The notes under the pieces are model-generated. The model was given only the letters and a program-made list of their open reading frames with translations. It was not told the DNA's origin and made no database searches. Positions 2,731-36,476 of a stretch of 64,000 nt of DNA are shown piece after piece. Every line of letters starts with the position of its first letter. Position 1 is the first letter of the stretch. Made by a program: the position numbers and the translations under genes. Source of the DNA: Geosiphon pyriformis uo1 (Eukaryota; Fungi; Glomeromycota); NCBI GenBank assembly GCA_016748015.1, contig JAAOMT010000660.1, positions 1 through 64,000 of the forward strand, read 5' to 3'.

Positions 2731-4521
2731 TCATTTTTTATGTCTGTTTGGGTTACAATCACCCATCAATGTTCCAAAATATGGTCCTCTATGTGCATCA
2801 GATTTCAAGTTGGAACGAGTTGTTGATGAACAGCTCTATTCGGAAAAGACAGGGAATTTATTTTTTAATATATATAAAAAAAGAATCATATTCGAACTTA
2901 CAAAGGACATTACGCCATCAATAGCAAGGCATCGATAATTTTGTTTTGGTGTTAACCAAATTTCTCGGCCGGCGTGATACCGACTTAATGGAATGTGAAT
3001 TGTTTCATCATTTTGATTTGTCACACGGTCATAAATTGGCAAGAAAATCAATGTCCACCTAGCGAAGATTAGATTTCCGATTGGTGGTTGACCAAAGGTA
3101 ATTACTCGAACATGTGGATTTTGATATTTTTTCCTTAAAGCAAGGCCTGTTAAAAATGCGTAAACTGTGAAAGAGAGGAGAAATTGATAAGAACTATGAT
3201 TCATGATAAAAATTTCTAATTTTCAAGTGCAATCTATACAATAACAAGATTTCAGTTTACCACCCCCTGAATCGAATCCAATTAAAACTACTGTTTTCAT
3301 AGATATTCTTAATTTAAAAAAATCTTGAATTGCTGGTTCGGCTTTTTGAAATATTTCCACATATTTTTTGTCACATTTTGAGCCCTGGGTTAAGGCATAA
3401 GGGCATTCTATTAATTTAAAATCAAAGTTATCCACCTTGTTCTTTGCCGGTAGAGTGCCTTGGAAACTGATCCAAGCGACTTTACTGTTTTCTTCATTTA
3501 CCAAAACTAAATTCAGCATTACAAAAATGACGTCAGTTGGCAAATAAAATAAATAAGGTCATAATTTTCTCCTAATTAAATTAATACCTCGAATATCTTT
3601 GGAAATCTGTACTTTTTCCGGATGGTCACAGTAAACATCATTTGCATAGCGAGCCGCCTTTGTCCAAAATGGTTTTTCCCAATTTCCCAAAATTTTTCTC
3701 TCTTGAAGATCGATTGCTTCTAAAGAACTTTTATCGGCTTTGATCAATATAGTTTTTCTCGCTAGTTGTTGTTCAGAATGTTTGTCTTTTGAATTAACTA
3801 ATTCAGATTCCTTTATTTGGGCGCTACCTTTTTCGAAATATTTTGTAAAATTTGTATCATCTTCTAAGATAGGATTTAAGAGTGATGAATCTAATACATC
3901 CCCAATTTCTAGGGTTGATGGCAAGTTGATAAAGTTTTCTTCTATTTGATTATTTCCCGTTAAGTTTTTATTATTTTTAGGATAAAATTCAAATTCTTCT
4001 GAATTTATCTGCTCGACCTTTTGATCAATAAAGTTTTTCTGATCCTCTTCTGGAAAGTCGGATAAATTGTCAATCGTAAGAAGTGGTTGAATTTCGTTCG
4101 TTATTTTTGACAGTTCACAAAAATCATTACAGCCTGATCCTTCATTATTTGCAATTCTCGATGATTGCAAATAGTCAGGTTCTTCATCGATCAGAGATTT
4201 TTTTATCTTCGTTTTGTATTCAAATTTTTTGCCCGATACTGAAATAATCTCATCCATAATTCTATTGAATTTGGAATCCTTCAAGAAATCACTTTTTCCT
4301 CTATAGGTCACGTTCATCTCTTGGCTTTTGCTTTGCAATTTTATTTTCCTTGCTTCCACACTTATTTCAGTAACTTTAAAAAAGAAAACCGCCATAAATA
4401 GTATAAAAAAGAAAACAAAAATATGATGTTGAAATAATTGTCTTTGTCGTTTTTGTGACTTATGATCAAATTGGCTTGTTTCTGGGATTTCGCTTGGAAG
4501 AATCGCAGCTTTTCTTCTCAT
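2731..4521 (-). CDS. Class-3 lipase-fold protein 1 (about 515 aa) with a long acidic N-terminal extension and non-canonical elbow GFDSGG
   Basis: Exons 4521-3588, 3506-3261, 3164-2902 and 2835-2731, all GT-AG and in frame. Motifs RYANDVYC, ISFQGT, IGFDSGGVYA, TFGQPPIGN, RVTNQND, HAGREIW, AHRGPYFG. Hydrophobic segment at about aa 34-49. Confidence 0.88.
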
Positions 4522-6779
4522 TATAAAATAATTATAACCTTTAGGAAAACTATAGTTTGGATAATTTTATAACAAAAATTGTAAAAGATAGCCACGCGTT
4601 TATTAACACATTCATTATCTTCCGAAGAATAACAAAAACCCGTATTATTGATAATTATCAGCAGGGGATTTTATGTTGATAATGAATGATTCCCTGAGGA
4701 ACTACAATGATTTGTGATAATAAAGGTTTCTATAATTGATCGTTCAATGGTGTTCCACTTGAAATTTATTTTATCCTTATAGTTGCTCGGACATTGCAGA
4801 ATTTTGTTAGGTAGAAAAATAAAAGCATGCCTTTAAATATTTACAAAATATTTACCGTTAATCTTGGAACTTTAAAGACGGAGAATTTTTATTCAGAAAT
4901 AATAGAGGCAATCACAAATTTACCATGAATAGATCAATCGCATTCTTGATTTTTATTAAATTTCTTGTCTTGAATATAAAACATATCTTTTTAAAATTTA
5001 ACAATATCAAGTAATAAAAATTGTTTGGTAAAATCAATTCGGTTTTTACTAAAGGGCATATCAATTCATTTTTACAAAATATTGAATTGAATTTGGCAAT
5101 TTTCAATTTGTTAATATAAATTAATTTGCATAAGAGACTTCATATCAAATTTTATTGTGATATTTTACATAAATTTTTTGAATTGTTTGATTGATAAAAC
5201 TTGATTATTTGAGAATTCCCCAAATGCTTCTTAATCAAAGTAAGTAATTTGATGATATTTAAAAGATTTTTTTTTAAAATTTGTTATTTATAAATTTTTT
5301 GAGAGCATTATTGTTAAAACCAAAAGATCAATCTTATTTCTCAAGAAATATTTTCATCTAATCTAATTTTATTTTCAAGATTACAGAATTTTGTCAAACT
5401 ACCTTTTAGCCAAAAATTATCCACTTATTATACCATCCAGTACAGAAAAAATATATTTTTGATAATCTTAACTTAAGCTAAATAGTTTACTTAGTAGAAA
5501 ACTTTTTCATCATTATAAATTTTTATAGAATTAATATTTCCATTTTTTAAAAGTTAACAAATTCTATCACTATGAAAAACCCAGCAATAGATCCGAATAT
5601 TTCTGATCGATCCCAACCCGGGAAAATTAATCTTACCATTTGGTTTGATCATCCATCACAATATACATGTAGTTTATTCCNNNNNNNNNNNNNNNNNNNN
5701 NNNNNNNNNNNNNNNNNNNNNNNNNNNNNNNNNNNNNNNNNNNNNNNNNNNNNNNNNNNNNNNNNNNNNNNNNNNNNNNNNNNNNNNNNNNNNNNNNNNN
5801 NNNNNNNNNNNNNNNNNNNNNNNNNNNNNNNNNNNNNNNNNNNNNNNNNNNNNNNNNNNNNNNNNNNNNNNNNNNNNNNNNNNNNNNNNNNNNNNNNNNN
5901 NNNNNNNNNNNNNNNNNNNNNNNNNNNNNNNNNNNNNNNNNNNNNNNNNNNNNNNNNNNNNNNNNNNNNNNNNNNNNNNNNNNNNNNNNNNNNNNNNNNN
6001 NNNNNNNNNNNNNNNNNNNNNNNNNNNNNNNNNNNNNNNNNNNNNNNNNNNNNNNNNNNNNNNNNNNNNNNNNNNNNNNNNNNNNNNNNNNNNNNNNNNN
6101 NNNNNNNNNNNNNNNNNNNNNNNNNNNNNNNNNNNNNNNNNNNNNNNNNNNNNNNNNNNNNNNNNNNNNNNNNNNNNNNNNNNNNNNNNNNNNNNNNNNN
6201 NNNNNNNNNNNNNNNNNNNNNNNNNNNNNNNNNNNNNNNNNNNNNNNNNNNNNNNNNNNNNNNNNNNNNNNNNNNNNNNNNNNNNNNNNNNNNNNNNNNN
6301 NNNNNNNNNNNNNNNNNNNNNNNNNNNNNNNNNNNNNNNNNNNNNNNNNNNNNNNNNNNNNNNNNNNNNNNNNNNNNNNNNNNNNNNNNNNNNNNNNNNN
6401 NNNNNNNNNNNNNNNNNNNNNNNNNNNNNNNNNNNNNNNNNNNNNNNNNNNNNNNNNNNNNNNNNNNNNNNNNNNNNNNNNNNNNNNNNNNNNNNNNNNN
6501 NNNNNNTTTCACATACTCTAAACATAATTTAGATGCGCAATAAGATTATATTAATCACTAATTGATTGTTATTAAAATTTTGTTTTTAACTCCAACAAAT
6601 GGAACAAAAATAGTTCCTTTAGCTTATCTTTCAAATTTTTTTGATTCGTAAAAATAATCTAGAATTTTGAATCTTTACGCGGCTGAAAACTATAAATTTG
6701 TGAAATTTATCAATGAGGGCTGTTTCATTCAATTCAAAACTAAAGATATAAATCACTTTAAAAAAAAACTTTCTTCACA

Positions 6780-8295
6780 ATGCTTTATCAAAGAAAGCAT
6801 CAAACTAAAAATCACTTTCAAAAAGTTAACGGGCAAAATATTTTTCTATCATTTTTCATTGTTTTTTTCTTAAATTCAATTGTACATGCAAACCCAATAT
6901 CCACCACAAGTATTACTAAAAGAGAGGATTTATTTGGATCAATTCCTTCGAATGATAATATCAATTTAAACTTGGATCCTTTTTCCATATCTAGTAATCC
7001 TTTTTTAGATGATAATAATAACAACCAAAATACTAACACATTAGATGGAATCCCTAGTTCACAAGAGATAGGTGATTTGCCACTTTTGTCATTTATAACT
7101 AATAGTGAAACATTACCAAATAATTTTCAATTACCTAAAGAGGAACTAGCTTCAAATAATTACTTCGACAATACAAGTCCTCTTACAAGTCAAAATATTG
7201 AAAATTATAAAACACTATTTGCTAACGCTGGCTCAAATCAAGGAATTAAGAAAGAATTTAATGAGATAGATAGTGAGAAAATCGAATTATATGGACTCTC
7301 TGCACAACGTATTTATTGTAGTATACCTTTAGAAGCCGAAGATATTATATATTCTTCCGATGGAATTCAAGGTACCCGGATTGAATATTGAAATTTTTTA
7401 GCTTTTTTAACTAATATATGTATTAATTGAAATATTTATTCTTTAGTAATGGCAGAAAAAGATGCAGCAAACTCGGAAATAATTATTAGTTTCCGTGGTA
7501 TCACACGAGCGACTAACATCATTAGTGATATCACACTAACTAATTACCCTTATGATGAATCTTCAAAAGTTCATCAAGGATTTTTGAAGATTTTTCAAAA
7601 AAATGAAAAAGCATTGATTAATCAGGTGTTAACGATGATAAATGATAATCACCCTCTTACTTTAACTATGACTGGGTTTGATTCTGGTGGTGGTATGTAA
7701 AATATTTTTCAAAGAGAAAAAAGTATTTTTATTTAAATTAATACCCTCTTTAATTGAATAATAGAAGCCAAAATAACTTTTTATAATTTATTTCTTATTA
7801 GTATATGCAATCTTTACAGCTTTAGCCTTGAAATTGCAAGGCAATTCATTTCAATTCAAAGATATTAACCTGTACACATTTGGACAACCTCGTATCGGTG
7901 ATAAAGCTTTTGCACAGCTTGTGAAAGAAAAACTAATTGTACGACGAGTTATTTATAACAATGACCTTATTCCACATAAACCTCAAATAGCTCAAGGATA
8001 TCTACACTTTGACACAGAGTATTGGATTAAGCCTCTTGGTCTTGCTAAATTTCAAACTTTTACATGTGAAGGAATAAAAGACCAATCTGGAAAATATCTA
8101 GGTGAAAATCCGGTAAGTTTTAAGTAAATGAGGAAAGAATCATTTGCATATCTTCCAATTTGATAAAAAAATTATAATTAATTATGTTCATTATTTTAGC
8201 AATGTTCAAATTCTGTACAAAAATTGGCATTGATCGCACATGAAGGTCCATATTGGTTCCTAAACTTTAATAACTGTAAAAAAGATTTTTATTAA
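6780..8295 (+). CDS. Secreted class-3 lipase-fold protein 2 (about 414 aa), elbow GFDSGG
   Basis: Exons 6780-7371, 7447-7692, 7802-8112 and 8200-8295. Signal peptide (VHA|NPI) then TKR. Motifs ISFRGI, KVHQGF, TGFDSGGVYA, YTFGQPRIGD, RVIYNNDLIPHKP, HFDTEYW, AHEGPYW. Confidence 0.92.
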
Positions 8296-10049
8296 CTATA
8301 ATACCCAATACCATGCTTTTTATCTTTATATATATTTTTTATAGCTATTACATGTCATAATTTTTATATTTTTTGTAAAATCTTTAAAGGAATTAAAGTT
8401 AGTCTTTTCAATAAGTTTTTAAGATTTTCTGAANNNNNNNNNNNNNNNNNNNNCCTTGATACCTTTATCCCTTCAATTTCTCCATCTCTCGGATTTTACT
8501 AATAGTCTAAATCACATCAAATTGGTTATATAGAGANNNNNNNNNNNNNNNNNNNNNNNNNNNNNNNNNNNNNNNNNNNNNNNNNNNNNNNNNNNNNNNN
8601 NNNNNNNNNNNNNNNNNNNNNNNNNNNNNNNNNNNNNNNNNNNNNNNNNNNNNNNNNNNNNNNNNNNNNNNNNNNNNNNNNNNNNNNNNNNNNNNNNNNN
8701 NNNNNNNNNNNNNNNNNNNNNNNNNNNNNNNNNNNNNNNNNNNNNNNNNNNNNNNNNNNNNNNNNNNNNNNNNNNNNNNNNNNNNNNNNNNNNNNNNNNN
8801 NNNNNNNNNNNNNNNNNNNNNNNNNNNNNNNNNNNNNNNNNNNNNNNNNNNNNNNNNNNNNNNNNNNNNNNNNNNNNNNNNNNNNNNNNNNNNNNNNNNN
8901 NNNNNNNNNNNNNNNNNNNNNNNNNNNNNNNNNNNNNNNNNNNNNNNNNNNNNNNNNNNNNNNNNNNNNNNNNNNNNNNNNNNNNNNNNNNNNNNNNNNN
9001 NNNNNNNNNTTAATAGGCTAAAAAGAAATTTTAATACTATTAATAGTAAAAACTATCTATCTTAAAACAAGAAATTAGTTAATAAAAAAGTTTTATCTAT
9101 TATACTAAGTTATAATTAATATAATTTTTCTATATAATTTATTTCTAAAAAATAACTGAAAACAAACATATTTTTCTTTTTTTCAATAAAAATAAATTAT
9201 ATTTCTTAATATTTAAAAAAAATTAAGATGTTATTTAAACCACTATATATTAAAAACTTATAATTTAAGAATAACTAATAATAAAGTTCTAAATATTGTA
9301 CATGATTTTTCATAATTATTTTATTGCAAATAAGTTATTTTCAAAAAATTATATGAATATTGTTATAATATAAAGTATGTATTTAAGATTATTTAAAAAA
9401 AATGCACAATATTCTAAATAAAAAGTTAAATATGACAAGTGCAAAATAATTATAAAGCTAATTTATTTACACAATTAAGCAACTACTATTAATTGGCTAA
9501 AAAATCATCACAAAATCCTTTCAAAAAAAAATTTTGTTAACAAATATAATACTCAATAAGACTCATTTTGGAAAAAGTTGGATAAAAATTAAAAAAAGAA
9601 CAAAAGCAAAAAAAAAGAAAAAAAAAAGAAATAATAAAAAAAGAAAAGAAGCAATAAAAAAAGATAAAAAAAATAAACAAGAGAACTATTTTGCACATAT
9701 TAAATTTATTACTAAAAAAATTTTCAAATTATTAAGTTATTTATTATAAATTGGCTCCTCTTTATGATGATTTAATTTAATAACAGCAATTTAATTTAAT
9801 TGAAAAATTAAATTTTTTTAATGTTTTATTAATTACAAGATCTTTAATTATTATTATTAGTTACTAATTTTTTTAAATACCAAGAAAAAAAGAAAATGTC
9901 TATCAAGATCTGTCTTACATTAGCAGTATCAAGTTAAATTCTTGAACAAATATTGTTTATAAAACTACATAAGCATAAAGTATAAACTCTGAGCTCTTAA
10001 AAATTTTCCAAGTTAGGAATTTTTTTTATTTGTGTTTTGCTATTTGCTT

Positions 10050-11418: not shown

Positions 11419-11438
11419 NNNNNNNNNNNNNNNNNNNN

Positions 11439-12170
11439 AATAACCAGTATGAAAATACTGGTGTCCACTAACTCACTTACATAAACAGGACGAAACTACC
11501 GGCGTCCGCCAACTTACGAACATAACCAGGACAAAATTACCGGTGTCCACCAACTCACGAGCATAACCAGGATGAAATTACTGACGTCTACATACTCACG
11601 AACATAAACACCAATAACCAGTATGAAAATACTGGTGTCCACTAACTCACTTACATAAATACTAATAACCAGTATGAAAATACTGGTGTCCACTAACTCA
11701 CTTACATAAACAGGACGAAACTACCTGCGTCCACCAACTCACAAACATAACCAGGACAAAATTACCGGCGCTCACCAACTCACGAACATAAACACCTATA
11801 ACCAGGATGAAATTACCGGCGCTCACCAACTCACGAACATAAACACCTATAACCAGGACGAAATTACCGGCGTTCACCAACTCACGAACATAAACACCTA
11901 TAACAAGGACAAAATTACCAGCGTCCATCAACTCACGAACATAAACACCTATAACCAGGACGAAATTACCGGCGTCCACCAACTCACGAACATAAACACC
12001 GATAACCAGGACGAAATTACCGGCGTTCACCAACTCACGAACATAACCAGGACAAAATTACCGGCGTCCACCAACTCACGAACATAAACACATATAACAA
12101 GGACGAAATTACCGGCGTTCACCAACTCACGAACATAAACACCGATAACCGGTACAAAGAAACACCAACA
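11439..12170. repeat. Minisatellite array of 51-bp and 41-bp units
   Basis: Tandem accaactcacgaacataaacacctataaccaggacgaaattaccggcgtcc with variants. Confidence 0.95.
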
Positions 12171-12391
12171 ACTCAACAATATCGAATAAACGAATAAACG
12201 AATAACGAAAATGGAATAAAACATTGATCACCAAATAACTGAAATTAAATTTCAGGGTTAGGTGGTGAGGAATTGATGATTGTTAGTCTGTTATCCATGC
12301 CTTTTGCGGGAGTGGGTGGGGATAGTTTAGATGTAAGAGGGCATAATCCAGCGTGGTTACCGAGGCATTTGNNNNNNNNNNNNNNNNNNNN

Positions 12392-14010
12392 TAAAATTGA
12401 TTTGAAACCTTTTAATGTTTGGAGGTGTTTTTCGGCTATGAAATATGACACCATTTTTTTTATGCTGCGACCATTTAATTTTTTATTTTTTCAGCAGCGA
12501 GATAAATATGGACGCCCATGACTGACCCTGCTATGACCATTTACATTGTTCTCTTATTTGTCTCATGGTTTAAGTGATGTGAATTTTATTTCCCATACTG
12601 ATCGAATTAACCATTTTAGGATAAACGAGCCAAAAAGAAAGTCATGAGGATCTGCATAGTATTATTTTCGAAATATGAAAACACGTTTAATGATGACATA
12701 GTAAAAACTCTGGAGGTTATCTTCAAATCAATTATACTAAAAAGTCTAGTTACTCCCACCCTTGTATTCATGTATTCGTGTGAAATACAAACGCGTAGGT
12801 TTTAATAAACAATCTAATGTCAAAATCAACAAATTAGAGGCAATTTAATATATAAAGAGGTGTTCTTTGCCATTCAAGCAAATTTTATCCTATATAGGAC
12901 TAATACTATCAAGGAGAAAGGTAATATTGTTATGTTTAATGTGATTTACTCTTGCCATTTGCTTATTTAGGGCGAACCCACTATCGGCTCCTAATGACAA
13001 ATTACTGGCGTCCACCAACTCATGAACATAAACACCAATAACCAGTATGAAAATACTGGTGTCCACTAACTCACTTACATAAACAGGACGAAACTATCGG
13101 CGCCCACCAACTCACGAACATAAACACCAATAACCAGTATGAAAATACTGGTGTCCACTAACTCACTTACATAAATACTAATAACCAGTATGAAAATACT
13201 GGTGTCCACTAACTCACTTACATAAACAGGACGAAACTACCGGCGTCCGCCAACTTACGAACATAACCAGGACAAAATTACCGGTGTCCACCAACTCACG
13301 AGCATAACCAGGATGAAATTACTGACGTCTACATACTCACGAACATAAACACCAATAACCAGTATGAAAATACTGGTGTCCACTAACTCACTTACATAAA
13401 TACTAATAACCAGTATGAAAATACTGGTGTCCACTAACTCACTTACATAAACAGGACGAAACTACCTGCGTCCACCAACTCACAAACATAACCAGGACAA
13501 AATTACCGGCGCTCACCAACTCACGAACATAAACACCTATAACCAGGACGGAATTACCGGCGTTCACCAACTCACGAACATAAACACCTATAACAAGGAC
13601 AAAATTACCAGCGTCCATCAACTCACGAACATAAACACCTATAACCAGGACGAAATTACCGGCGTCCACCAACTCACGAACATAACCAGGACGAAATTAC
13701 CGGCGTTCACCAACTCACGAACATAACCAGGACAAAATTACCGGCGTCCACCAACTCACGAACATAAACACCTATAACAAGGACGAAATTACCGGCGTTC
13801 ACCAACTCACGAACATAAACACCTATAACCGGTACAAAGAAACACCAACAACTCAACAATATCGAATAAACGAATAAACGAATAACGAAAATGGAATAAA
13901 ACATTGATCACCAAATAACTGAAATTAAATTTCAGGGTTAGGTGGTGAGGAATTGATGATTGTTAGTCTGTTATCCATGCCTTTTGCGGGAGTGGGTGGG
14001 GATAGTTTAG
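12392..14010 (+). repeat. Composite repeat copy containing the minisatellite array at about 12995-13850
   Basis: Same flanks as 16860-18400 (gggcgaacccactatcggctcctaatgac ... tttcagggttaggtggtgagg). Confidence 0.9.
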
Positions 14011-14030
14011 NNNNNNNNNNNNNNNNNNNN

Positions 14031-14317: not shown

Positions 14318-14357
<40 letters not shown>

Positions 14358-14872: not shown

Positions 14873-14892
14873 NNNNNNNNNNNNNNNNNNNN

Positions 14893-15345: not shown

Positions 15346-15399
15346 AGTCAAGATATATTATTTAATATGAAAATATCATTATTTTCCAATAAATATATA

Positions 15400-16471: not shown

Positions 16472-18700
16472 NTTTTTGATTTTGAATAAAAATGGCCTTG
16501 TGTTAATCTAAGCGTTGGCATATTAATTTCGGGTTTTCGTGATATGTAAATGATTTTTTGTCAAGATCTTATGAAATCTATGGAAGCCCGTTTTTGAATT
16601 CATTATTATCATTAAATATCAAGAGCTGATTTTAAAAGGATGGCCGAAAATCATATGCTCTTTACGCATTCACCCTGATACGTAATTTGTAATGTGATGC
16701 TGACAATATAATAGTATTGCAAAAAAAAACTAAAAGAGAGAAATGCCAGCGTGATGCTGAAACACTGATACTTCCAAACATTAGATCAGACCTTGTAATT
16801 AAAGAAAGAAAGAAGAAACATCTATTCTACTTAAGTAATATCGTTTATTATTATCATATATAAAATTGATTTGAAACCTTTTAATGTTTGGAGGTGTTTT
16901 TCGGCTATGAAATATGACACCATTTTTTTTATGCTGCGACCATTTAATTTTTTATTTTTTCAGCAGCGAGATAAATATGGACGCCCATGACTGACCCTGC
17001 TATGACCATTTACATTGTTCTCTTATTTGTCTCATGGTTTAAGTGATGTGAATTTTATTTCCCATACTGATCGAATTAACCATTTTAGGATAAACGAGCC
17101 AAAAAAAAAAGTCATGAGGATCTGCATAGTAAAATTTTCGAAATATGAAAACACGTTTAATGATGACATAGTAAAAACTCTGGAGGTTATCTTCAAATCA
17201 ATTATACTAAAAAGTCTAGTTACTCCCACCCTTGTATTCATGTATTCGTGTGAAATACAAACGCGTAGTTTTTAATAAATGATCTAATGTCAAAATCAAC
17301 AAATTAGAAGCAATTTAATATATAAAGAGGTGTTCTTTGCCATTCAAACAAATTTTATCCTATATAGGACTAATACTATCAAGGAGAAAGGTAATATTGT
17401 TATGTTTAATGTGATTTACTCTTGCCATTTGCTTATTTAGGGCGAACCCACTATCGGCTCCTAATGACAAATTACTGGCGTCCACCAATTCATGAACATA
17501 AACACCAATAACCAGTATGAAAATACTGGTGTCCACTAACTCATTTACATAAACAGGACGAAACTACCGGTGTCCACCAACTCATGAACATAACCAGGAC
17601 AAAATTACTGACGTCCACCAACTCACGAACATAAACACCAATAACCAGTATGAAAATACTGGTGTCCACTAACTCACTTACATAAACACCAATAACCAGT
17701 ATGAAAATACTGGTGTCCACTAACTCACTTACATAAACAGGATGAAACTATCGGCGTCCACCAACTTACGAACATAACCAGGACGAAATTACCGGCGTCC
17801 ACCAACTCACGAACATAAGCACCTATAACCAAGATGAATTACCGGCGTCTACCAACTTACGAACATAACCAGGATGAAATTACCGGAGTCCACCAACTCA
17901 CGAACATAAACACCTATAACAAGGACAAAATTACCGGTGTCCACCAACTCACGAACATAAACACCTATAACCAGGATGAAATAACCGGCGCTCACTAACT
18001 CACGAACATAAACACCGATAACCAGGACGAAATTACCGACGTCCACCAACTCACGAACGTAACCAGGACAAAATTACCGGCGTCCACCAACTCACGAACA
18101 TAACCACCTATAACAAGGACCAAATTACCGGCGTTCACCAACTCACGAATATAAACACCGATAACCAGGACGAAATTACTGGCGTCCACCAACTCACGAA
18201 CATTAACACTGATAACCAGTACAAAGGAACACCAACAACATAACAATATCGAATAAACGAATAAACGAATAACGAAAAAGGAATAAATCATTGATCACCA
18301 AATAACTGAAATTAAATTTCAGGGTTAGGTGGTGAGGAATTGATGATTGTTAGTCTGTTATCCATGCCTTTTGCAGGAGTGGGTGGGGATAGTTTAGAAG
18401 TAAGAGGGCATAACCCAGCGTGGTTACCGAGGCATTTGTGATGATTGACTAGCGAGTGACAGGTATTACTTTTGTAATACTAAGGGAGTTATTAGAATCT
18501 TCTTTGCTAAGATTCTTAATACCCTTGTATGTTGAAGCTCGCCATATTTGTCAATTATCTTTTCTATATCCATCTAGTCTATATAGGAATAAAACTTTAT
18601 CAGTATATAACAAAGTTATCAGGGAAGGGTTTTTACAATGCCAAAATGGTTCACCCGTTGCCAATTTGATTAACTTTTGTTATTTGCTGTTTATCGTTTA
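16472..18700 (+). repeat. Longest ungapped composite repeat copy, with minisatellite at about 17465-18235
   Basis: Contains the downstream blocks contiguously. Its array differs in unit order from the other copies. Confidence 0.9.
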
Positions 18701-23533: not shown

Positions 23534-24112
23534 TCAAAAAGGCTGTTGATTTAGGGCAGTAGAATCAGGACGAAATTGTAACATGAAGGGTCGAATTTGT
23601 CCATCAGGACTTACCAAAACGAATTGATTTGGGTTTGATGGATCTGTAATGAGTCGGTCGGTAGATGATGCAGGGCTACTAGGAATCATTATTGGTCCCC
23701 CAATCAATAAATCCTTTGCAGTATCTCCTGGCTTGGAAATAAAGAATTGGTTTTGTTCATTCGAAGGTGGTAAAATGTTTCCAGTATTATCACCTGTAGC
23801 TAATGCAAGGTTAAAACCATTTCCAGAGTTGACTTTAAATTTGTAATTATCGTTCGATAATTTTTCATTTCTTTGGTCACCAAAATTAATCATAAACCCA
23901 CTATTGTCATTTGAATTATCTGATGATGTAATATGTTGGAAAAAGTTGTTTAGATCATCACGCTTGGTGATTTTGCTATTTTTAATAGGAACGGCTTCGA
24001 CATTTGTTAGATTGATTAGTATTCCTAAAGCAACCGTAATGATAAAAATTGTGAAGAAAATTTTTTGTCGTTTTGAGGTAAACCAGTTTAATTGAAGATT
24101 TGATATATTCAT
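23534..24112 (-). CDS. Orphan secreted low-complexity protein (192 aa)
   Basis: Hydrophobic leader, then VEA|VPIKNSKITKR. The body is N/D/S/P-rich with no Cys. Confidence 0.8.
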   Translation of the reverse strand: MNISNLQLNWFTSKRQKIFFTIFIITVALGILINLTNVEAVPIKNSKITKRDDLNNFFQHITSSDNSNDNSGFMINFGDQRNEKLSNDNYKFKVNSGNGFNLALATGDNTGNILPPSNEQNQFFISKPGDTAKDLLIGGPIMIPSSPASSTDRLITDPSNPNQFVLVSPDGQIRPFMLQFRPDSTALNQQPF

Positions 24113-25449: not shown

Positions 25450-25995
25450 GACCCAATACATTAGATGAAATTATCAGTTCACAAGAGATCATTAATTAAG
25501 ATATTCATATTATTTAGTAATAGCAATTACCTTTATAATTAATTCTCAAAAAAATGAAAGCCCATTAATTAATCCAATGTTAACAGAGATAAAGAACAAT
25601 ATAGTTTTTTTTATTTAAGTATGGCTAAATTTATTATATTAAATGGTTACAGTTTTAGCCTTTGAAATTTAAAGATGAACCGATCTGATTCACAGATATT
25701 AACGTTTATGCGCTTTGAATAATTTCGTATCGATTTTAAGACTTTTATGAAAATAAATTAATTATACGAAAAAATTTTTCACAACAATAACCTTATTCCA
25801 CATAGACTTCAAAAATTTCAAGAATATTTACATTTTATACAAAGTATTGGATTAAAAACTTCTTGATCTTTGTAATTATCAGACTTTTAAGTGTAAAGGA
25901 ATAAAAAAGATTCTCCTGGAAAATATCTCAAAAGACTAATTAAAAAAGAAAACTATTATTAATTGAATTCATTATTTTAGCAATATTCAAAAATT
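25450..25995 (+). pseudogene. Decayed paralogue of lipase-fold genes 2 and 4
   Basis: Collinear relics matching 7030-8210: acattagatgaaattatcagttcacaagagat, aaaaaatgaaagcccattaattaatc, aacaataaccttattccacata, catttt...gtattggattaa, ttcattattttagcaatattcaaa. Contains deletions and frameshifts. Confidence 0.8.
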
Positions 25996-26736: not shown

Positions 26737-28397
26737 ATGGAAAACAATATAACCATGTCCTTCAATAACAAAATAGAAACTAAAAGATATTCTTCTTATC
26801 TTAACCAAAAGCAAAATTTTTTCTTCAAATTTTTTCTCCTGTCAATATCAGTTACTATCGTTTTGGTTTCTGTGCCAACCAATGCAACGCCTTTATCGCA
26901 ATTCACTAAACGCCAACTAAGCGATCTAGTTGCTTTTCAAATGGAATCATCTCCAACCTCTAATCTCGGTGAAAATAATGATTTAACATTTGATTTAGGA
27001 CAAAATACCTTTCCACAGACAGATATTTTTGGCATGAACAAGAATTTAGAAACTAGTACTGGTCAAAAAGTTGGAGCACTACCAAATAGCTTAGATCAGT
27101 CTAACAATGAAAATCAAAATATTTTCCAAATTGGAAATAATCTAGGTTTTGATTTAAGTTCCTTTGATAACCAGGTTCCAGTCGGTTCTACATCTCGAGC
27201 TATAACTGATATGGCTAGTCTTCCTCAAGATCAATTTTTTGAAAATAATAATAATCTTTCATCAGACGAAACAAATTCACAATTTTTGGCTTTTACTGAC
27301 CAGCCCTCATCAAACGAGAATGAGTTCGGCCAATCTAATACAGGTGGTTTTGATATCGCAGCAGCTTCCGGAGGGAAATCACTAGTAGATCGAGCTCTTG
27401 AAAACGAGCTCGCAAAATACGCCAAATATGCAAGTGATGCGTATTGTCCAGATACCGAAATGCATGTGATCACCGGAAATATGCGAGGTAAAATTTCCTA
27501 AATTTTCAAAAGAAATTATTCAAAAATCAATTAATAAGTTTTATACTCTTTCTTTTAATAGCTGCAGTCATAGATAATTTCAATGGATTACTAGTGATCA
27601 TTTTTCAAGGAGCCATTCACGCAACTGATAATGCCCTTTTTCAGGATAGTGCAATGGTCGATTTTCCCCTAGCACCCAATGCCAAAGTTCATCATGGCTT
27701 TTATGCTGCCGTTAATTCTGGAAAGAAAAATTTAGTCAACTTCTTTAAAAACACCGCAGGTGTTACCTCTGACTCAAATGTGATATTGACTGGTCATAAT
27801 TCTGGTGGTGGTATGTTATTTTTAATTCTATTGAGCAAATTAAATATCACTTTTACGAATAAAAGTCAGGTAAACGATTAAAAATATTTAAATTTCCCAC
27901 AGCCCTGGCATTATTTTCGGCACTTCTAGTATTAAAATCAGAGCTCAAGCCCAAAACTATTCAGATTTTTACCTATGGTCAACCACGTGTCGGAAATAAA
28001 GGATTCGCTGAATATGTTAACCGAGAAATTCCAGACTTGTATCGTGTGATAAATGGCAAAGATACTGTGGCGAATAGTCCCAGTAGAGGTTCAACAGGAT
28101 GGGTGCATCATGAAAAAGAATATTGGATTGATCCTAAATCGAAAAAAACGTATAGTTGTCCTGGGACGTTTGACGGCAGTGGAAATTTTGTTGATGAGAG
28201 TCAAGTATGTCGCATCATATATACTGAATATATAATTTTAAATGACCCAATGCGAATTTCTTAATTTACTTTCCTTTTTTATTTAGGAATGCTTAAATGC
28301 TCCAGGTCAATATAATTCAGCATTGAATGCTGGTCCATATTTCTCCATCACAATGGGGAAAACTTGTCTGCCACCGGGAAGAAGGCCGCGATGTTAA
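26737..28397 (+). CDS. Secreted class-3 lipase-fold protein 3 (about 470 aa), elbow GHNSGG, with Asn at the catalytic His position
   Basis: Exons 26737-27487, 27562-27810, 27903-28204 and 28287-28397. TNA|TPLSQFTKR. Motifs KYASDAYC, IFQGA, KVHHGF, TGHNSGGALA, TYGQPRVGN, RVINGKDTV, HHEKEYW, ALNAGPYF. The start could instead be the ATG at 26755. Confidence 0.9.
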
Positions 28398-28707
28398 ACT
28401 TTCAAATTTTTGTACAGAATCAACCGTATTTTTTTCTCTTCCAACAGAATTTTCAAGTTTAGAAGACTTACTTTTTTCGAATTTAATCCTTTAAAATTTC
28501 ATTAGAGTAGCTCTTTGAAAAGACTAAAGTTATATTGTATTTATCCAAGTATTTTCTTAATTCTTATCCTCGTCTGAATAAATTAATAAAATAATTGATT
28601 TTAAAAATAATTAATTTTTTATATTTACAAAATTTTTTGAAGAGATCTAAAGGTCTTTGTAATAATAAACTTTGGTATATGCCAACAAATACTGTATGTA
28701 TTACATA

Positions 28708-29992
28708 CAGTCTGGTAAGAAAAAAATTGGAAATATAAAAATAATTACTATGTCTTAACTAATGTACCAAATTACATAAAACAACTATTATTAGAAAGTC
28801 AAATACCATATAATTTTATTAAAAAAAATTAATAGGAAATTCTTTCCTCATTGATCCTACTAACCTAATTAAGGTAGATTCAGGAATATCTTGCCACTCT
28901 TCCCCCATAAATTTCTCTAATTCACTACGATTTTGAGGCATTCTTTTTAACAATAGCCCAAAGGTTTTCTATTGGGTTTAAGTTGGGACTATTAGATGGC
29001 CACCCCAACAAATCAGTTGTATTCTCAGCAATAAACTCTTTGGCAAGCTTGCTAGTATGCTTGAGGTCATTATCTTGTTGGAATCGCCAATTATACCCCA
29101 GCATTGCTCTAATTTCAGGTAAGTGGTTACGAAGAATATCTATATAAAATTGAGCATTCATTATTTGAACAAAACAGAATTAATTAGTCTTTCCTTTTTC
29201 GTAGAAACCCCCCCCCCCCCCCACGTGAGAATTTTTGTTCGATCGTTAGGCATAGGACGAATTGGTCGAGTACCTTTATGCCAACGTTTTACCGTGTTTT
29301 GAAAAAGTTGAAAAGATGTTTCGTCAGTAAAAACTGTTCTTTTCCAATCATCGTTCAGGTGTTTTTGGGCCCATTCTACACGTTTTCGCTTATGCTCTTC
29401 GGTCAGCATTGGAGTTGCTCTAGGAAAACTTTTTTTATAATTAAGGTTGGATAAATGGTTTTGAATAGTAACATGAAAAACATTTATTCCCTTCTTAGCC
29501 AACTTTATTGCTAAATATCTAGACGAAACTGAGGAATCTCTACTATTAATCTGCCCTAATACTCTCGAAGAATTTCCCGTAATCTTTCTTGGCCGACAAT
29601 TACCACTCGCATGCTTTATTGTTCCTTTTTTTTGAGTTTTTCGAGGATATTATAGATTGTAGAAAGAAGTATATTCGTTTTATTCTGTATTTCTTTCGCC
29701 TTACGTATTCCTTGCTTCCAAAAATGTAATAAGACTTGCCGTTCCGTTGCGTTTCTTGCTTTGAAGTCGGCATTTCAAAGAAAAGTTTTAAAAAAAACTA
29801 TTAGTTAATACGCGAGAAAATATTTTTAGAGCTCAGCCACTTACCTAATATTCTGTTTCCATTTTTACCATCACAAAACTTACCAAAAATGATTAAACCA
29901 AACGCAATCTTAGTAGATTCATATTGTCGATTGAAACTGGTAAAATACTACATGTAATTTGAAAAGTATAAATGAATTATATCTGATCAAAA
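28708..29992 (-). mobile_element. Tc1/mariner (DD34E) DNA transposon with a frameshifted transposase
   Basis: VFTDETSF, then WRFQQDN-x-PSNSPNLNPIENLW with 34 residues between the second D and E. ATG at 29773. The probable terminus is TA|CAGTCTGGTAAG at 28706-28719. The other end is cut by the adapter junction. Confidence 0.9.
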
Positions 29993-30011
29993 AGATGTGT
30001 ATAAGAGACAG
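29993..30011 (+). other. Tn5 mosaic end / Nextera adapter (library artefact)
   Basis: Exact 19-mer AGATGTGTATAAGAGACAG joining two unrelated segments. Confidence 0.97.
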
Positions 30012-31317
30012 GATATAGAAAAGATAATTGACAAATATGGCGAGCTTCAACATACAAGGGTATTAAGAATCTTAGCAAAGAAGATTCTAATAACTCCCTT
30101 AGTATTACAAAAGTAATACCTGTCACTCGCTAGTCAATCATCACAAATGCCTCGGTAACCACGCTGGATTATGCCCTCTTACATCTAAACTATCCCCACC
30201 CACTCCTGCAAAAGGCATGGATAACAGACTAACAATCATCAATTCCTCACCACCTAACCCTGAAATTTAATTTCAGTTATTTGGTGATCAATGTTTTATT
30301 CCATTTTCGTTATTCGTTTATTCGTTTATTCGTTTATTCGATATTGTTGAGTTGTTGGTGTTTCTTTGTACCGGTTATAGGTGTTTATGTTCGTGAGTTG
30401 GTGAACGCCGGTAATTTCGTCCTTGTTATAGGTGTTTATGTTCGTGAGTTGGTGGATGCCGGTAATTTTGTCCTGGTTATGTTCGTGAGTTGGTGAACGC
30501 CGGTAATTTCGTCCTGGTTATGTTCGTGAGTTGGTGGACGCCGGTAATTTCGTCCTGGTTATGTTCGTGAGTTGGTGGACGCCGGTAATTTTGTCCTGGT
30601 TATGTTCGTGAGTTGGTGGGCGCCGGTAATTTCGTCTTTGTTATAGGTGTTTATGTTCGTGAGTTGGTGAACGCCAGTAATTTGTCATTAGGAGCCGATA
30701 GTGGGTTCGCCCTAAATAAGCAAAAGACAAGAGTAAATCACATTAAACATAACAATATTACCTTTCTCCTTGATAGTATTAGTCCTATATAGGATAAAAT
30801 TTGCTTGAATGGCAAAGAACACCTCTTTATATATTAAATTGCCTCTAATTTGTTGATTTTGACATTAGATTGTTTATTAAAACCTACGCGTTTGTATTTC
30901 ACACGAATACATGAATACAAGGGTGCCAGAGTTTTTACTATGTCATCATTAAACGTGTTTTCATATTTCGAAAATAATACTATGCAGATCCTCATGACTT
31001 TTTTTTTNNNNNNNNNNNNNNNNNNNNNNNNNNNNNNNNNNNNNNNNNNNNNNNNNNNNNNNNNNNNNNNNNNNNNNNNNNNNNNNNNNNNNNNNNNNNN
31101 NNNNNNNNNNNNNNNNNNNNNNNNNNNNNNNNNNNNNNNNNNNNNNNNNNNNNNNNNNNNNNNNNNNNNNNNNGATCTTGACAAAAAATCATTTACATAT
31201 CACGAAAACCCGAAATTAATATGCCAACGCTTAGATTAACACAAGGCCATTTTTATTCAAAATCAAAAAATCCAACATAAGAAATGAAGTTTCATATTTA
31301 TCTGCTATGCAAAGAAC

Positions 31318-31348
<31 letters not shown>

Positions 31349-32350
31349 CATAGTGATGAAGATGAATCTCATGTAATACGGGACACGATCAGCAATTTGG
31401 TTACCATATTTACATGGCTGTTTGTTGATGGAAACCAAGTTCTCATGAGAGATTTATCTCTTTTAGGAGCAAAGCGGCCAAAATTAATTAGACAATGGTT
31501 CGCTTGTTTTTTAGCATGTTGTGGTAAAAATTAATTAAGATAAAAATGAGAAGATGCAAATTTTTTGACAGAGAGTATGTTTTTTCTTGAGTTTGTANNN
31601 NNNNNNNNNNNNNNNNNAATACAAGGGTGCCAGAGTTTTTACTATGTCATCATTAAACGTGTTTTCATATTTCGAAAATAATACTATGCAGATCCTCATG
31701 ACTTTTTTTTTTGGCTCGTTTATCCTAAAATGGTTAATTCGATCAGTATGGGAAATAAAATTCACATCCCTTAAACCATGAGACAAATAAGAGAACAATG
31801 TAAATGGTCATAGCAGGGTCAGTCATAGGCGTCCATATTTATCTCGCTGCTGAAAAAATAAAAAATAAAATGGTCGCAGCATAAAAAAAATGGTGTCATA
31901 TTTCATAGCCGAAAAACACCTCCAAACATTAAAAGGTTTCAAATCAATTTATATATAAATTAGATATGATAATAATAAACGATACTACTTAAGTAGAATA
32001 GATGTTTCTCATTCCTTTCTTTAATTACAGGGTCTGATCTAATGTTTGGAAGTATCAGTGTTTCAGCGTCACGCTGGCATTTCTCTCTTTTAGTTTTTTT
32101 TTGCAATACTATTATATTGTCAGCATCACATTACAAATTACGTATCAGGGTGAATGCGTAAAGAGCATATGATTTTCGGCCATCCTTTTAAAATCAGCTC
32201 TTGATATTTAATGATAATAATGAATTCAAAAACGGGCTTCCATAGATTTCATAAGATCTTGACAAAAAATCATTTACATATCACGAAAACCCGAAATTAA
32301 TATGCCAACGCTTAGATTAACACAAGGCCATTTTTATTCAAAATCAAAAA
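30012..32350 (-). repeat. Inverted, gap-fragmented composite repeat copies, with minisatellite at about 30355-30690
   Basis: Reverse complement of parts of 16472-18570 and 14031-14490. Confidence 0.88.
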
Positions 32351-34897
32351 NNNNNNNNNNNNNNNNNNNNATAAGAGATTTGTGATATTTCTTCAGTGAC
32401 AAAGGGAGAATTTCGGACAACAAAAATGGCTAATGACGCATACATTCTCTCAAAGAAAAATAATAAGGATCATTTCTTTTATCACTTCCATTCATTTATT
32501 GCTTCTCTTCCTTTATAACTTCCTTTTCTTTATCGCTTTCCTTTCTTTATCGCTTCGCTTCTCTTCCTTCATTCCTTCTTTTTCTTCGTCCTTTCTTTCT
32601 TTTTTTTCCTTTTTTTTATCCTCTCTTCCCTTTCTTTCTTTCTCTCTCTCTCTCTTCGTTTCTATCCAAATTTTTTAAAGGTGAATCTCACTGAGAATTG
32701 TACTTGTCAAAAATTAAAAATTTAATAATTAAAAATTTTAAAAAAAAAGATTTATTTGAAAAGATTTTGTTTTTTCAAATAAACTCGAGTACAAACTTTA
32801 TGATGTGACAATAGTCATATAATTTTTTTTTGTAAACGACTTATTTGCAACAAAACTCATTGAAAGCGACAAAGGTAATAATAATGAAAAGTTTTTAGTG
32901 TTGCTTTATTTATATAATGTTTTATTATGTACAATATTTAGAACGTTGTTAGATTACAAGTTTTTATTTTATTATTTTTTAAATAAATGCTTAATTTCCA
33001 TAATAAATAAAATCTTTAAAATTGAAAGCCCGTTTTATAATTTAAAAAAAAAATCTTGAATCATTTTTTATTTAATAATTTTATTAAAAAGTTACAAAAA
33101 AAACGTGTTTTTTAAAAAAAAAATCAAATTAGTACCTTTTTCAAAAAGAGATGTAAATATTGAAGTTTTCCCAAACTCGGGTTTCCCAAATTAAGAAATC
33201 ATTAACTTCTTTTGTTATAATTGATCAAAGTAAACAGACCTCTATTTTTTTCACATCTTATTAACAATAAATACACCATCTTTTTCCTCATTTTACATCA
33301 TTGGCTTAAGCAAGTAAAAATCGCTATTAAAATGTCTCAATTTCTTCCCTTTTTTCTTAACTAAATTTCTAAAATGCAGTCATTACTACCGCCATTTTGA
33401 TGTAAAATTATTCTTTTTTTAATTAGAATATGCAGTCTTAAATAATTTCGTAATTGACGAGAAAGATAACGCCGTTTCAAGACAAGTTAGTTTTTATAAG
33501 CATCATATTCAAGTAAAATTTCTGTTCTCGGATCTCTGTACAAACAAATAAATTAGAAAAAACCAATTGTCATTACTTTTGGTCAGCTAAAATGGGAAAA
33601 GAAGTTTTTATTTTTTCACTTAAATCAAACTTGAAATAAAATAAATTTTCTTTAAAACTTTATAGGAATAATATTAAGTGCAATTAGCACATTTTTCTTG
33701 AATTTTTTTTCGCATATAATCACCAATTTTGTGCAATAAATTAATATAAACTAATTATATATTATGTTTAAAAGTTAATAAATTTCGACATAGTTAAAAA
33801 TTTAAGTGAAAATTGTGAGATAATTTTAACAATAAATATTTTGTACAAATTTTTTAAGAGTTTTTAATTAATATATATATAATAAATAAAAATAAAATTG
33901 CAAATGTGACAAATAAAAATTATATTAATTGAAATTGTAATTATATAATAATTAAGTATTAAATTGATTGCAATTTATTAAAATACTTTTTTTAAAAAGA
34001 AAATATTGTCAAATCTAAAATAGTAATTTTTGTTAAAATAAAACATATAAATTCGATAAAAAAAAGTTTTAATTTTTTAATTTTTAATCAGATAAATAAA
34101 AATTTAATATAATTTGTAATGTTTATTATATGTTTATACATATTATATATATATAAAAATTATTAATTAGAAGCATTAAAATTTGTTTTAATATTTTTAT
34201 ATATTTAAGTATTTTTTACAATGTTTTTTAACTTTTTATAATGTATTCGTAATATTTTAATAATTTTAGTTAAAACATGAAATCAAATAAATAAAATAAA
34301 TAATTTAATAAAAAAATAATAATAATAATTTTTATTACTTTATTTTTTAACATATATTTTATTGTAAAATTAAAATATAGATAAATTATTTATATTAATT
34401 AATAAATTAATAAATTTTTAATTAATTAATTTATTTATGTATTTGTTATTAACTTAATTTTTGACTTGATTTAATGAGATCAGTAAATCTTTTGAATAAA
34501 ATTGAAAGATTCATGATATAAGTTATAAGATACATATATTTTCAAAAAATACTATAAATATATTTAAAAAATTTATATTTTATAGAGTTTTTAGCATATC
34601 TAAAACATAAAAACTTTTTCTTACTTTTAATTCTTTTAATTCTTTTAATTCTGGTATTTTGTTTTTATATTTATTAATAAGATGTTTTCAAAGACTTGAA
34701 ATTTCAAAAAACTTTACCACAATTATTACATATCACATGTAATTCATCTTTTTAAAAATAATTTCATATAAACAATATATATTGAAAATTCCTTTGATAT
34801 ATTTATAGTTATAATAAAATAAAAATTTCTGACTTACAAATAACTTTAAAATTGATAAAAGATAACAAGCATGGTATTATCTAGTATGACTAATAGT

Positions 34898-36476
34898 TTA
34901 GGATGAATTGTCACAATCCTTAACGGTTTTAAACAAATATGGGCCTTCATGTTCAATCGATGCCAAACCCGTTGCAGAAGCTGAACATTGCTAAAATGAT
35001 GAAATCAATTAATACTTATTTTTAAAATTAATCATTATCAATTCCTCATTTGCTTAAAACTTACCGGATTTTCGCCCATTAATCTTCTAGATTGGTCTTT
35101 TATTCCATCACATTTAAAAACCTCGCCTCCATTAGTTCCAATAGTTTTATCCCAATATTCTGTATCAAAATGTAGATATCCTTGAGAAATTTGAGGTCTA
35201 TGTGGAATAGGGTCACTTTGATGAACAACTCGTCGTACAATTAGTTTTTCTGTTACGAGCTGTGCGAAAGCTTTATCACCGATACGAGGTTGTCCAAATG
35301 TATATACTTCAACATCTTTGACTGACGATGATTCGCCTCGAAATTTTAAGGCTAAAGCTGTAAATATTGCATATACTAAATAAGAAGTAAATTATACAAA
35401 GAAAATTAAAAAAAGGTTATTTGAGCTACTAATATTCAATTAAAGAGAGTCTTAAAATAAAGATATTGTTTTTCCTCTTTGAGAAATTTTTACATACCAC
35501 CACCCGAATCAGACCCAGTCATAATTAAAGAAGAGACTGTTTTCTCCCTTATTTCCTTTGACACAATATTAATCAATGCTTCTTCATTTTTTAGAAAAAT
35601 GTTTAAAAATCCTTTATGAACTTTTGACGATTCATCATAAGGGTGATTAGTTAGTGTAATATCACTAATGATATTAGCCGCTGGTGTAAAACCAAGAAAA
35701 CTATAAAATATATTGGAGCTTTCTACATCTTTTCCTGCTATTACTAAAGAATAATATTTCAATTAATGGTAGTTAAAAGGCTTTGTAAAATTTTAATATT
35801 CAATGCAGATACCTTGAAAATCTTTAGAAGCATAAACAACTCGTGTGGTCCTGAAAGGTTTACTATGAATACCACATAATGCAAAGTCTGCGTATAATGC
35901 GATTTTGTTACGAGTTTCCATATCAATTGCTTGATATGAGCCAGCGTTAGCTTTAGCAAATAGTGTTCCATCATTTTCAATATTTTGACTTGTTATAGGA
36001 GTTGTATTTTCGAAGAAATTATTTGAAGCTATTTGAAGTGGATCCGTTTGAACTGATAATTCGGATGTTTCAGCTGAGGATCCTGGTATATTATTTAACT
36101 CACTATTATCTATAGATGGCAAAAATGCCAAGTCACCTATCTCTTGTGAACTAGAGATTCCATCTAATATGTTAGTATTTTGGTTATTATTATTATTATT
36201 ATCATCTAAAAAAGGATTACTGGATAAGGAAAAAGGATTCAAGTTTAAATTGAAATTATCGTTCGAAGGATCTAAGTTTAAATTGATATTATCATTCGAA
36301 GGAATTGATCCAAATAAATCCTCCCTTTTAACAATACTTGTGGTGGATATAGGGTTTGCATATGTGATTGAAATTATGAAAAACGAATTTAAAAAAAGTG
36401 AAATGATTCCTCGGTTAAAACTTTGAAAGAAAACTTTGGATTTATACTTTCTTTGAGAGATAATATAATTAAACAT
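34898..36476 (-). CDS. Secreted class-3 lipase-fold protein 4 (about 437 aa), elbow GSDSGG, close paralogue of gene 2
   Basis: Exons 36476-35813, 35743-35498, 35375-35065 and 34990-34898. TYA|NPISTTSIVKR. Motifs KVHKGF, TGSDSGGVYA, YTFGQPRIGD, RVVHQSDPIPHRP, EHEGPYL. Confidence 0.92.

What the first reader, a model, noticed from the sequence alone, without database searches (positions are those of the whole stretch)
2731..36476. Family of secreted lipase-fold proteins whose nucleophile Ser is replaced by Asp or Asn
Seen: after splicing, the four intact genes read GFDSGGVYA, GFDSGGVYA, GHNSGGALA and GSDSGGVYA. Aligned without gaps to the class-3 lipase GHSLGGALA, the catalytic Ser position holds D, D, N and D, and an invariant Ser sits one residue later. 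The acid (ND/KD/SD) is kept in all four and the His (H-x-GPY) in three. Intron positions and ORFs are intact across very divergent paralogues, so this is not decay. Established: Asp at this elbow position is the nucleophile of epoxide hydrolases and haloalkane dehalogenases (GHDWG). Inference: either new Asp-nucleophile chemistry on a lipase-3 scaffold, a register-shifted Ser nucleophile, or non-catalytic lipid-binding effectors.
Basis: partly seen in the sequence, partly recalled or inferred. Interest (0 to 1): 0.85.

Follow-up and report, generated by a model that had tools for sequence, protein, structure and literature searches.

The report
Serine-less lipase-like genes, Asp subgroup
Four intact genes of Geosiphon pyriformis, the fungus that houses Nostoc cyanobacteria, encode lipase-shaped, probably secreted proteins with aspartate or asparagine where a lipase needs serine; they are one small branch of a family of about 300 such serine-less genes (mostly glycine there), so they more likely bind a partner than perform new aspartate chemistry.

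Summary
Observation confirmed: four intact four-exon Lipase_3 genes (no assembly gap inside any) read G-F-D-S-G-G, G-F-D-S-G-G, G-H-N-S-G-G and G-S-D-S-G-G. The acid is kept in four, the His in three. The genome is Geosiphon pyriformis. Two AlphaFold2 models (pLDDT about 90; Rhizomucor lipase / FaeA fold) put the Asp at the strand-helix turn and the Ser in the helix, arguing against a shifted serine. A genome-wide census changes the meaning: of 334 elbow-motif matches, Gly has 220, Ser 44, Ala about 22, Asp about 18, Asn 6, Val 0. Asp arose repeatedly. Acid and His are kept as well in Gly copies, so they do not mark Asp catalysis. Epoxide-hydrolase motifs are absent. In the B/D group the fold core is under purifying selection (dN/dS 0.31) and variable sites are near or above neutral (1.47). 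Best reading (0.68): secreted pseudo-lipases that bind rather than cut; Asp/Asn are tolerated fillers of a released elbow. Asp-nucleophile chemistry stays possible (0.07). No serine-less Asp, Asn or Gly relative was found outside Geosiphon. This scan already reported the Gly-type family on other DNA of this genome; no report of this Asp/Asn-Ser subclade was listed. Expression is untested: no RNA run was listed.

The parts
2731..4521 (-). Gene A (NCBI G9A89_020463), exons 4521-3588, 3506-3261, 3164-2902, 2835-2731; 515 aa; elbow G-F-D-S-G-G, Asp390 codon 3273-3271; acid Asp446 3009-3007; His496 2793-2791; hydrophobic segment at aa 33-51, then a long linker
   Evidence: model
6780..8295 (+). Gene B (G9A89_020464), exons 6780-7371, 7447-7692, 7802-8112, 8200-8295; 414 aa; elbow G-F-D-S-G-G, Asp276 codon 7680-7682; acid 7963-7965; His397 8239-8241; signal-like segment, KR at aa 47, acidic Asn-rich linker
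25631..25991 (+). Decayed remnant of a B-like copy (intron 2/exon 3 region, 72% DNA identity, frame broken by stops and shifts); described only
26737..28397 (+). Gene C, exons 26737-27487, 27562-27810, 27903-28204, 28287-28397; 470 aa; elbow G-H-N-S-G-G, Asn330 codon 27798-27800; acid 28061-28063; catalytic His replaced by Asn448 (28326-28328): two of three triad residues lost
34898..36476 (-). Gene D (G9A89_020470), exons 36476-35813, 35743-35498, 35375-35065, 34990-34898; 437 aa; elbow G-S-D-S-G-G, Asp300 codon 35510-35508; acid 35214-35212; His421 34951-34949; recent paralogue of B (74% DNA identity)
   Evidence: model

Best explanation
These are secreted class-3 pseudo-lipases of Geosiphon pyriformis. 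An ancestral fungal lipase gene was multiplied about 300-fold in this lineage and the family was released from serine catalysis. The elbow residue still has to fit the tight strand-helix turn, so it moves among small or turn-friendly residues one or two base changes from the ancestral AGY codon: mostly Gly, also Ala, Asp, Asn, and Ser again. The four window genes belong to one old subclade that settled on Asp (Asn in gene C) followed by Ser. The fold, with its buried acid and usually the His, is kept as a scaffold around a pocket, while variable positions change fast. The proteins most likely act outside the cell or in the symbiosis compartment as binders (lipid or other small ligand, or a partner surface such as Nostoc's) or as decoys. 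Shown: gene structure, motifs, fold, census, repeated origin of Asp, conserved core. Inferred: secretion, lack of activity, binding, any role in the symbiosis.
For: Census of the elbow codon in G-[H/Y/F/L]-X-x-G-G-G|GT: Gly 220, Ser 44 of which 41 AGY, Ala about 22, Asp 17-18, Glu 3, Val 0, Asn 6; 334 matches against 8 in the reversed controls. All 20 sampled Asp/Asn rows as one clade are rejected, narrowly (p-AU 0.047); single Asp copies sit beside Gly or Ser copies. [quoted passage not shown] Elbow, acid and His never change in 13 canonical lipases, whereas the elbow changes 0.15 times per unit length in this subclade and 0.24 in the rest of the expansion. Gene C lacks both nucleophile and His yet is intact and has a recent duplicate. 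The oxyanion Ser/Thr is lost in B, C and D. B/D group: dN/dS 0.31 (0.16-0.51) in core columns and 1.47 (1.11-1.97) in variable columns. Fold is intact.
Against: No assay, no ligand and no expression data (one search listed no RNA run). Within this subclade Asp is kept in four of five deep lineages, the +1 Ser in four of five, and the one lineage that lost Asp also lost His, which is what a functional Asp-His pair would give. All scored Asp copies keep the His, while two of three intact Asn lineages lost it. Tomato MKS1 shows that a serine-less elbow can still be an enzyme (PMC3531081). The dN/dS values are simple pairwise counts on five related, AT-rich genes, so 1.47 is suggestive only.
Confidence: 0.68

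Rival explanations
1. Serine-independent chemistry by the His-Asp pair (general base on water or substrate, as in methylketone synthase 1 or lyase-type alpha/beta-hydrolases), common to Gly, Ala and Asp copies; the elbow residue only shapes the pocket.
For: Acid kept in 97% and His in 83% of 39 serine-less copies; the His column is among the slower ones in the expansion; MKS1 has G-H-A-L-G and is a decarboxylase (PMC3531081).
Against: His is lost in several intact copies, gene C included; His is commonly kept in non-catalytic members; hundreds of fast-diverging copies fit binding diversity better than one reaction (inference).
Confidence: 0.13
2. The Asp/Asn-Ser subclade (about 11 genes, the four here included) uses Asp as nucleophile, like epoxide hydrolases and haloalkane dehalogenases, on a lipase-3 scaffold.
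For: Asp tops the elbow in both models; the four genes fall in one subclade (support 88) with Asp in 8 of 10 rows; loss of Asp and His coincide in gene C's lineage; the subclade keeps the ancestral K-V-H-x-G that the rest has mostly lost.
Against: No H-G-x-P, no D-W-G and no G-x-G-x-S motif; only Lipase_3 passes in Pfam; no epoxide hydrolase or dehalogenase among the 50 best fold matches; Asp is not clearly more conserved here than the elbow elsewhere (0.15 vs 0.24 changes per unit); Asp recurs sporadically among Gly copies, one transition away.
Confidence: 0.07
3. Birth-and-death by-products: copies persist mostly neutrally, with only general folding constraint and no specific function.
For: Overall dN/dS 0.7-1.4 among recent paralogues B, D and kin; a decayed remnant in the window and broken copies elsewhere; repeat-rich genome (64% repeats, PMC9453076).
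Against: Core dN/dS 0.31, interval below 1; older pairs 0.20-0.57; frames, splice sites, cysteines and signal-like ends kept at 26-35% identity between A, B and C.
Confidence: 0.08
4. Register-shifted serine: the Ser one residue after the Asp/Asn is the nucleophile of an ordinary hydrolase.
For: Ser(+1) is in 9 of 10 subclade rows although the column is fast elsewhere (0.15 vs 0.50 changes per unit); 20 further genes read G-x-G-S-G-G.
Against: In both models the Ser is the first helix residue, the place of lipase Leu145, and Asp is the turn residue, also when canonical outgroup lipases are left out of the alignment; two residues before the Ser stands His, Phe or Ser(once) rather than Gly; a subclade member has Ala there; gene C has no His. 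Distances could not be measured, as coordinates are not returned.
Confidence: 0.04

Closest known systems
Class 3 fungal lipases (Pfam PF01764 Lipase_3; Rhizomucor miehei lipase 1TGL/3TGL, Aspergillus niger FaeA 1UWC)
   Same: Same fold (Foldseek E 2e-16, TM 0.81; Z 28, rmsd 2.1 A over 234 residues), same order of elbow, acid and His, signal-like N-terminus and pro-region.
   Different: No Ser at the elbow; G-H-S-L-G-G is replaced by G-x-[D/N]-S-G-G; oxyanion Ser/Thr lost in three of four; His lost in C; long acidic linker; family of about 300 copies.
Non-catalytic alpha/beta-hydrolase-fold proteins (neuroligins, glutactin, neurotactin, insect yolk proteins, listed in PMC3531081); plant EDS1/PAD4/SAG101
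   Same: Fold kept for binding with an incomplete or unused triad; EDS1/PAD4 are lipase-3-like and are the next fold matches after true lipases (Z 17-20). That they act without catalysis is from my own knowledge.
   Different: Different subfamilies and kingdoms, few copies; none is a fungal, secreted, several-hundred-member expansion.
Epoxide hydrolases and haloalkane dehalogenases (Asp nucleophile)
   Same: Asp at the top of the nucleophile elbow, acid and His present.
   Different: Different subfamily fold with a cap domain; the H-G-x-P, D-W-G and G-x-Sm-x-S/T motifs are absent here; none among the top fold matches.
Tomato methylketone synthase 1 (Ala at the elbow, G-H-A-L-G)
   Same: Serine-less elbow with conserved His; about 22 Geosiphon paralogues also have Ala there.
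   Different: Hydroxynitrile-lyase subfamily, single plant enzyme with a known reaction; no activity is known for the Geosiphon proteins.

Membership tests
Lipase_3 fold family (PF01764) | Profile match above the curated cut-off | tested here: met
   50-81 bits against cut-off 22 for the NCBI proteins of A, B, D; exon-wise for C
Lipase_3 fold family (PF01764) | Rhizomucor-type alpha/beta fold with strand-turn-helix elbow | tested here: met
   Models pLDDT 89.9 and 89.3; best matches RmL and FaeA
Active class-3 lipase | Ser nucleophile in G-x-S-x-G at the elbow apex | tested here: not met
   Asp, Asp, Asn, Asp at the position of RmL Ser144
Active class-3 lipase | Catalytic acid and His | tested here: inconclusive
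   Acid in 4 of 4, His in 3 of 4; geometry not measurable here
Active class-3 lipase | Oxyanion Ser/Thr after F-R-G | tested here: not met
   Thr in A only; Ile, Ala, Phe in B, C, D
Active class-3 lipase | Triglyceride or ester hydrolysis | not testable with these tools
   needs assay
Epoxide hydrolase / haloalkane dehalogenase | Asp at the elbow apex | tested here: met
   A and D models; B by alignment; C has Asn
Epoxide hydrolase / haloalkane dehalogenase | H-G-x-P oxyanion motif, aromatic residue after the Asp, G-x-Sm-x-S/T motif (PMC5082902 for the first and third) | tested here: not met
   none found by pattern in any of the four
Epoxide hydrolase / haloalkane dehalogenase | Cap-domain fold with ring-opening tyrosines; Abhydrolase_1-type profile | tested here: not met
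   No such Pfam match; no such enzyme among 50 best fold matches down to Z 5.8
Non-catalytic alpha/beta-hydrolase (pseudoenzyme) | Canonical nucleophile absent while the fold is under purifying selection | tested here: met
Non-catalytic alpha/beta-hydrolase (pseudoenzyme) | No measurable catalysis; a binding partner | not testable with these tools
   needs assay
Secreted protein | Cleaved signal peptide | tested here: inconclusive
   Hydrophobic segment at aa 22-51 after a basic stretch in all four, KR site after it in B, C, D; no signal-peptide predictor; NCBI models of A and D start downstream of it

The most novel reading that the evidence does not exclude
Inside the large serine-less family, the Asp/Asn-Ser subclade (about 11 genes, four in this window) has turned the dead lipase elbow into a working Asp nucleophile with the retained acid and His. 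It would be the first Asp-nucleophile enzyme on a class-3 lipase scaffold, perhaps acting on cyanobacterial epoxides, halogenated or lipid metabolites, with gene C as a secondarily dead copy.
Probability: 0.07. Interest if true: 0.85.

Novelty: new variant of a known kind. Interest (0 to 1): 0.52.

Why it matters
Geosiphon is the model for a fungus that takes up and houses cyanobacteria, and how it recognises and manages Nostoc is open. A Lipase_3 expansion in its genome has, to my memory, been reported from domain counts (Malar et al. 2021; the paper was not held). The data here say that about 87% of the motif-bearing copies lack the catalytic serine, so the expansion should not be read as extra fat digestion but as a large, fast-diverging repertoire of lipase-shaped binders. 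That gives concrete candidates for partner or lipid recognition. The Asp subclade is the best place to ask whether a dead hydrolase can regain catalysis through another nucleophile. I found no paper describing the serine loss, but the library misses many subscription papers.

Tried and rejected
Assembly artefact: rejected, no gap lies inside a gene. Splicing artefact: rejected, the D/N and S codons precede all donors and NCBI models agree. Single origin of Asp: rejected narrowly. Relatives in other organisms: 157 scored proteins not named Geosiphon have Ser and 5 (one unnamed Logan cluster) have Ala; none has Gly, Asp or Asn; hits named Ambispora, Entrophospora, Glomus and Gigaspora are ordinary G-H-S-L-G-G lipases; these searches are not exhaustive. 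Metagenome scan gave one ordinary bacterial lipase. No RNA run was listed. The genome paper and one mechanistic review were not held. The careful tree did not finish; trees are quick ones with SH-aLRT support only and many open forks. The joined-model search step was left out: spliced models were built and kept only inside scripts, and database searches used single exons by reference or proteins returned by the tools. Broken copies were not joined or mended.
Full report
Observation. The window is AT-rich (28% GC) and holds four Lipase_3 genes within the finding. Enumerating GT-AG junctions gave open models with three introns in phases 1, 1, 0 for each: A minus 4521-2731 (515 aa), B plus 6780-8295 (414 aa), C plus 26737-28397 (470 aa), D minus 36476-34898 (437 aa). 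The Asp/Asn and Ser codons are in exon 2 ahead of every possible donor. The acid is kept in four and the His in three; C has Asn instead. None of the N gaps lies inside a gene. Domain identities are 26-35% except B-D at 59%. A decayed B-like remnant lies at 25631-25991.

Origin. A profile of the four second exons retrieved a protein identical to residues 69-515 of gene A, KAG9288157.1 of Geosiphon pyriformis; B and D are KAG9288158.1 and KAG9288164.1. These NCBI models share the elbow splice. The assembly (128.3 Mb, 792 contigs) fits the published 129 Mb and 795 scaffolds (PMC9453076). Geosiphon partners Nostoc and is sister to Ambisporaceae (PMC11134847).

Which residue tops the elbow. HMMER aligns the Asp of A with Ser144 of Rhizomucor miehei lipase. 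The AlphaFold2 model of A (103 sequences, pLDDT 89.9) has a strand at 108-114, one turn residue at 115 (the Asp) and a helix from 116 (the Ser). A model of D, built from 33 Geosiphon expansion sequences without outgroup lipases (pLDDT 89.3), gives the same: strand 110-116, Asp117 in the turn, helix from Ser118. Best fold matches are RmL, Rhizopus lipase and FaeA, then EDS1/PAD4; no epoxide hydrolase or dehalogenase is among the top 50. Atom distances could not be measured. The shifted-serine reading is therefore unlikely, and the Asp does sit where a nucleophile would.

The family. A Lipase_3 search of the genome gave 783 candidates, and most of the best loci had Gly at the elbow. Pattern counts of G-[H/Y/F/L]-X-x-G-G followed by the shared intron give 334 matches in three disjoint classes against 8 in controls: Gly 220, Ser 44 (41 AGY), Ala about 22, Asp 17-18, Asn 6, Glu 3, Cys 3, Val 0, and about 17 others, some by chance. 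These are lower bounds and include broken copies. AGY to GGY to GAY are single transitions. Ala, Asp and Glu occur while Val, equally one step from Gly, does not. This fits the established view (my own knowledge) that the elbow residue has a strained backbone that Gly, Asp and Asn tolerate and beta-branched residues do not. Of 25 Asp/Asn matches only 11 have Ser at +1, and 20 Gly copies have Ser there too.

Phylogeny and constraint. Five sampled Geosiphon G-H-S-L-G-G genes group with lipases of other fungi (support 96-97); all else forms a Geosiphon radiation in which Ser, Gly, Asp, Asn, Ala and Cys are interspersed. One clade for all Asp/Asn rows is rejected at p-AU 0.047, while the four window genes fall with six other rows in one subclade (support 88, not starred). 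The acid and His are kept in Gly copies (17/17, 14/16) about as well as in Ser copies (24/24, 19/22) and Asp/Asn copies (19/21, 14/19). [quoted passage not shown] In 13 canonical lipases the elbow, acid and His never change; the elbow changes 0.15 times per unit length in this subclade and 0.24 in the rest. Pairwise dN/dS among B, D and three close kin is 0.7-1.4 overall, which splits into 0.31 for columns conserved in the other rows and 1.47 for variable columns; older pairs give 0.20-0.57. So the fold is maintained and the variable parts change fast. The method is crude and the pairs are not independent.

What is left for the Asp idea. In the subclade, Asp is kept in four of five deep lineages, and the lineage that changed it to Asn (gene C) also lost the His. 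Genome-wide, all scored Asp copies keep the His, while two of three intact Asn lineages lost it. This could reflect an Asp-His function, a structural salt bridge, or chance on few events. Against it, the motifs that define epoxide hydrolases (PMC5082902) are absent, the oxyanion Ser/Thr is gone in B, C and D, and Asp appears sporadically all over the Gly radiation.

Distribution. Among 218 proteins fetched, no Gly, Asp or Asn elbow was seen outside proteins named Geosiphon; one unnamed cluster had Ala. Hits from Ambispora, Entrophospora, Glomus and Gigaspora were ordinary lipases. The searches are word-limited or capped, so absence is not proven.

Mechanism and verdict. Most likely (0.68) these are secreted pseudo-lipases: signal-like segment, KR site and acidic linker, then a lipase-3 fold whose pocket binds but does not cut, with Asp/Asn as a tolerated filler. 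Rivals are serine-independent His-Asp chemistry (0.13; precedent MKS1), neutral persistence (0.08), Asp nucleophile (0.07) and shifted serine (0.04). They are members of the Lipase_3 fold family, fail the test for active class-3 lipases and fail the test for epoxide hydrolases/dehalogenases. Any link to the Nostoc symbiosis is inference from lineage specificity and secretion signals. No RNA run was listed, so expression and splicing are unconfirmed by reads.

Prior knowledge. I found no paper on serine loss in Geosiphon lipases; the genome paper was not held. After I had recorded my reading, the scan's notes showed that other agents reported the Gly-type family on other pieces of this genome, with the same conclusion; these are unchecked AI notes and not independent support. 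No note with this subclade's motif was listed. The joined-model search step was left out: spliced models stayed inside scripts, and searches used single exons by reference or tool-returned proteins. Broken copies were described only.

Noticed in passing
window 39312-40343 (-): Secreted-type 343-aa ORF made of His/Met-rich repeats separated by KR sites (57-nt period), like a Kex2-processed peptide precursor; no Pfam match. Already noted by the scan (s1-526164).
   Followed up: no
window 57817-60282 (-): Signal-bearing ORF of long imperfect repeats that spans an assembly gap (58405-59270); continuity across the gap not tested.
   Followed up: no
window 23534-24112 (-), 37823-38224 (+), 42916-43626 (+), 44929-46323 (+), 48435-48833 (+), 49815-50396 (-): A run of ORFs with signal-like N-termini, several with a KR or PR site and an acidic low-complexity region like that of the lipase-like genes; the four scanned gave no significant Pfam family. 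The window looks like a cluster of orphan secreted proteins.
   Followed up: partly
window 11440-13834, 17469-18221, 30436-30644: Dispersed arrays of a mixed 41/51-nt tandem repeat, next to several assembly gaps.
   Followed up: no
window 56704-57141 (-): Sel1-repeat ORF (E 5e-7), a family common in Glomeromycotina (from my own knowledge).
   Followed up: no
L031 (G000:C286) and L037 (G000:C591): Broken paralogues: L031 is an A-like copy with Asn at the elbow and part of exon 3 missing; L037 is a B-like copy with a frameshift in exon 3.
   Followed up: partly
loci L055-L084: Many paralogues that do have Ser at the elbow lie inside the serine-less radiation and lack the oxyanion Ser/Thr (5 of 24 keep it), so some may be returns from Gly rather than working lipases.
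   Followed up: partly
P0016 (KAG9286608.1): A Geosiphon protein model with two tandem lipase-fold domains, both G-H-G-S-G-G; may be two genes fused by annotation.
   Followed up: no
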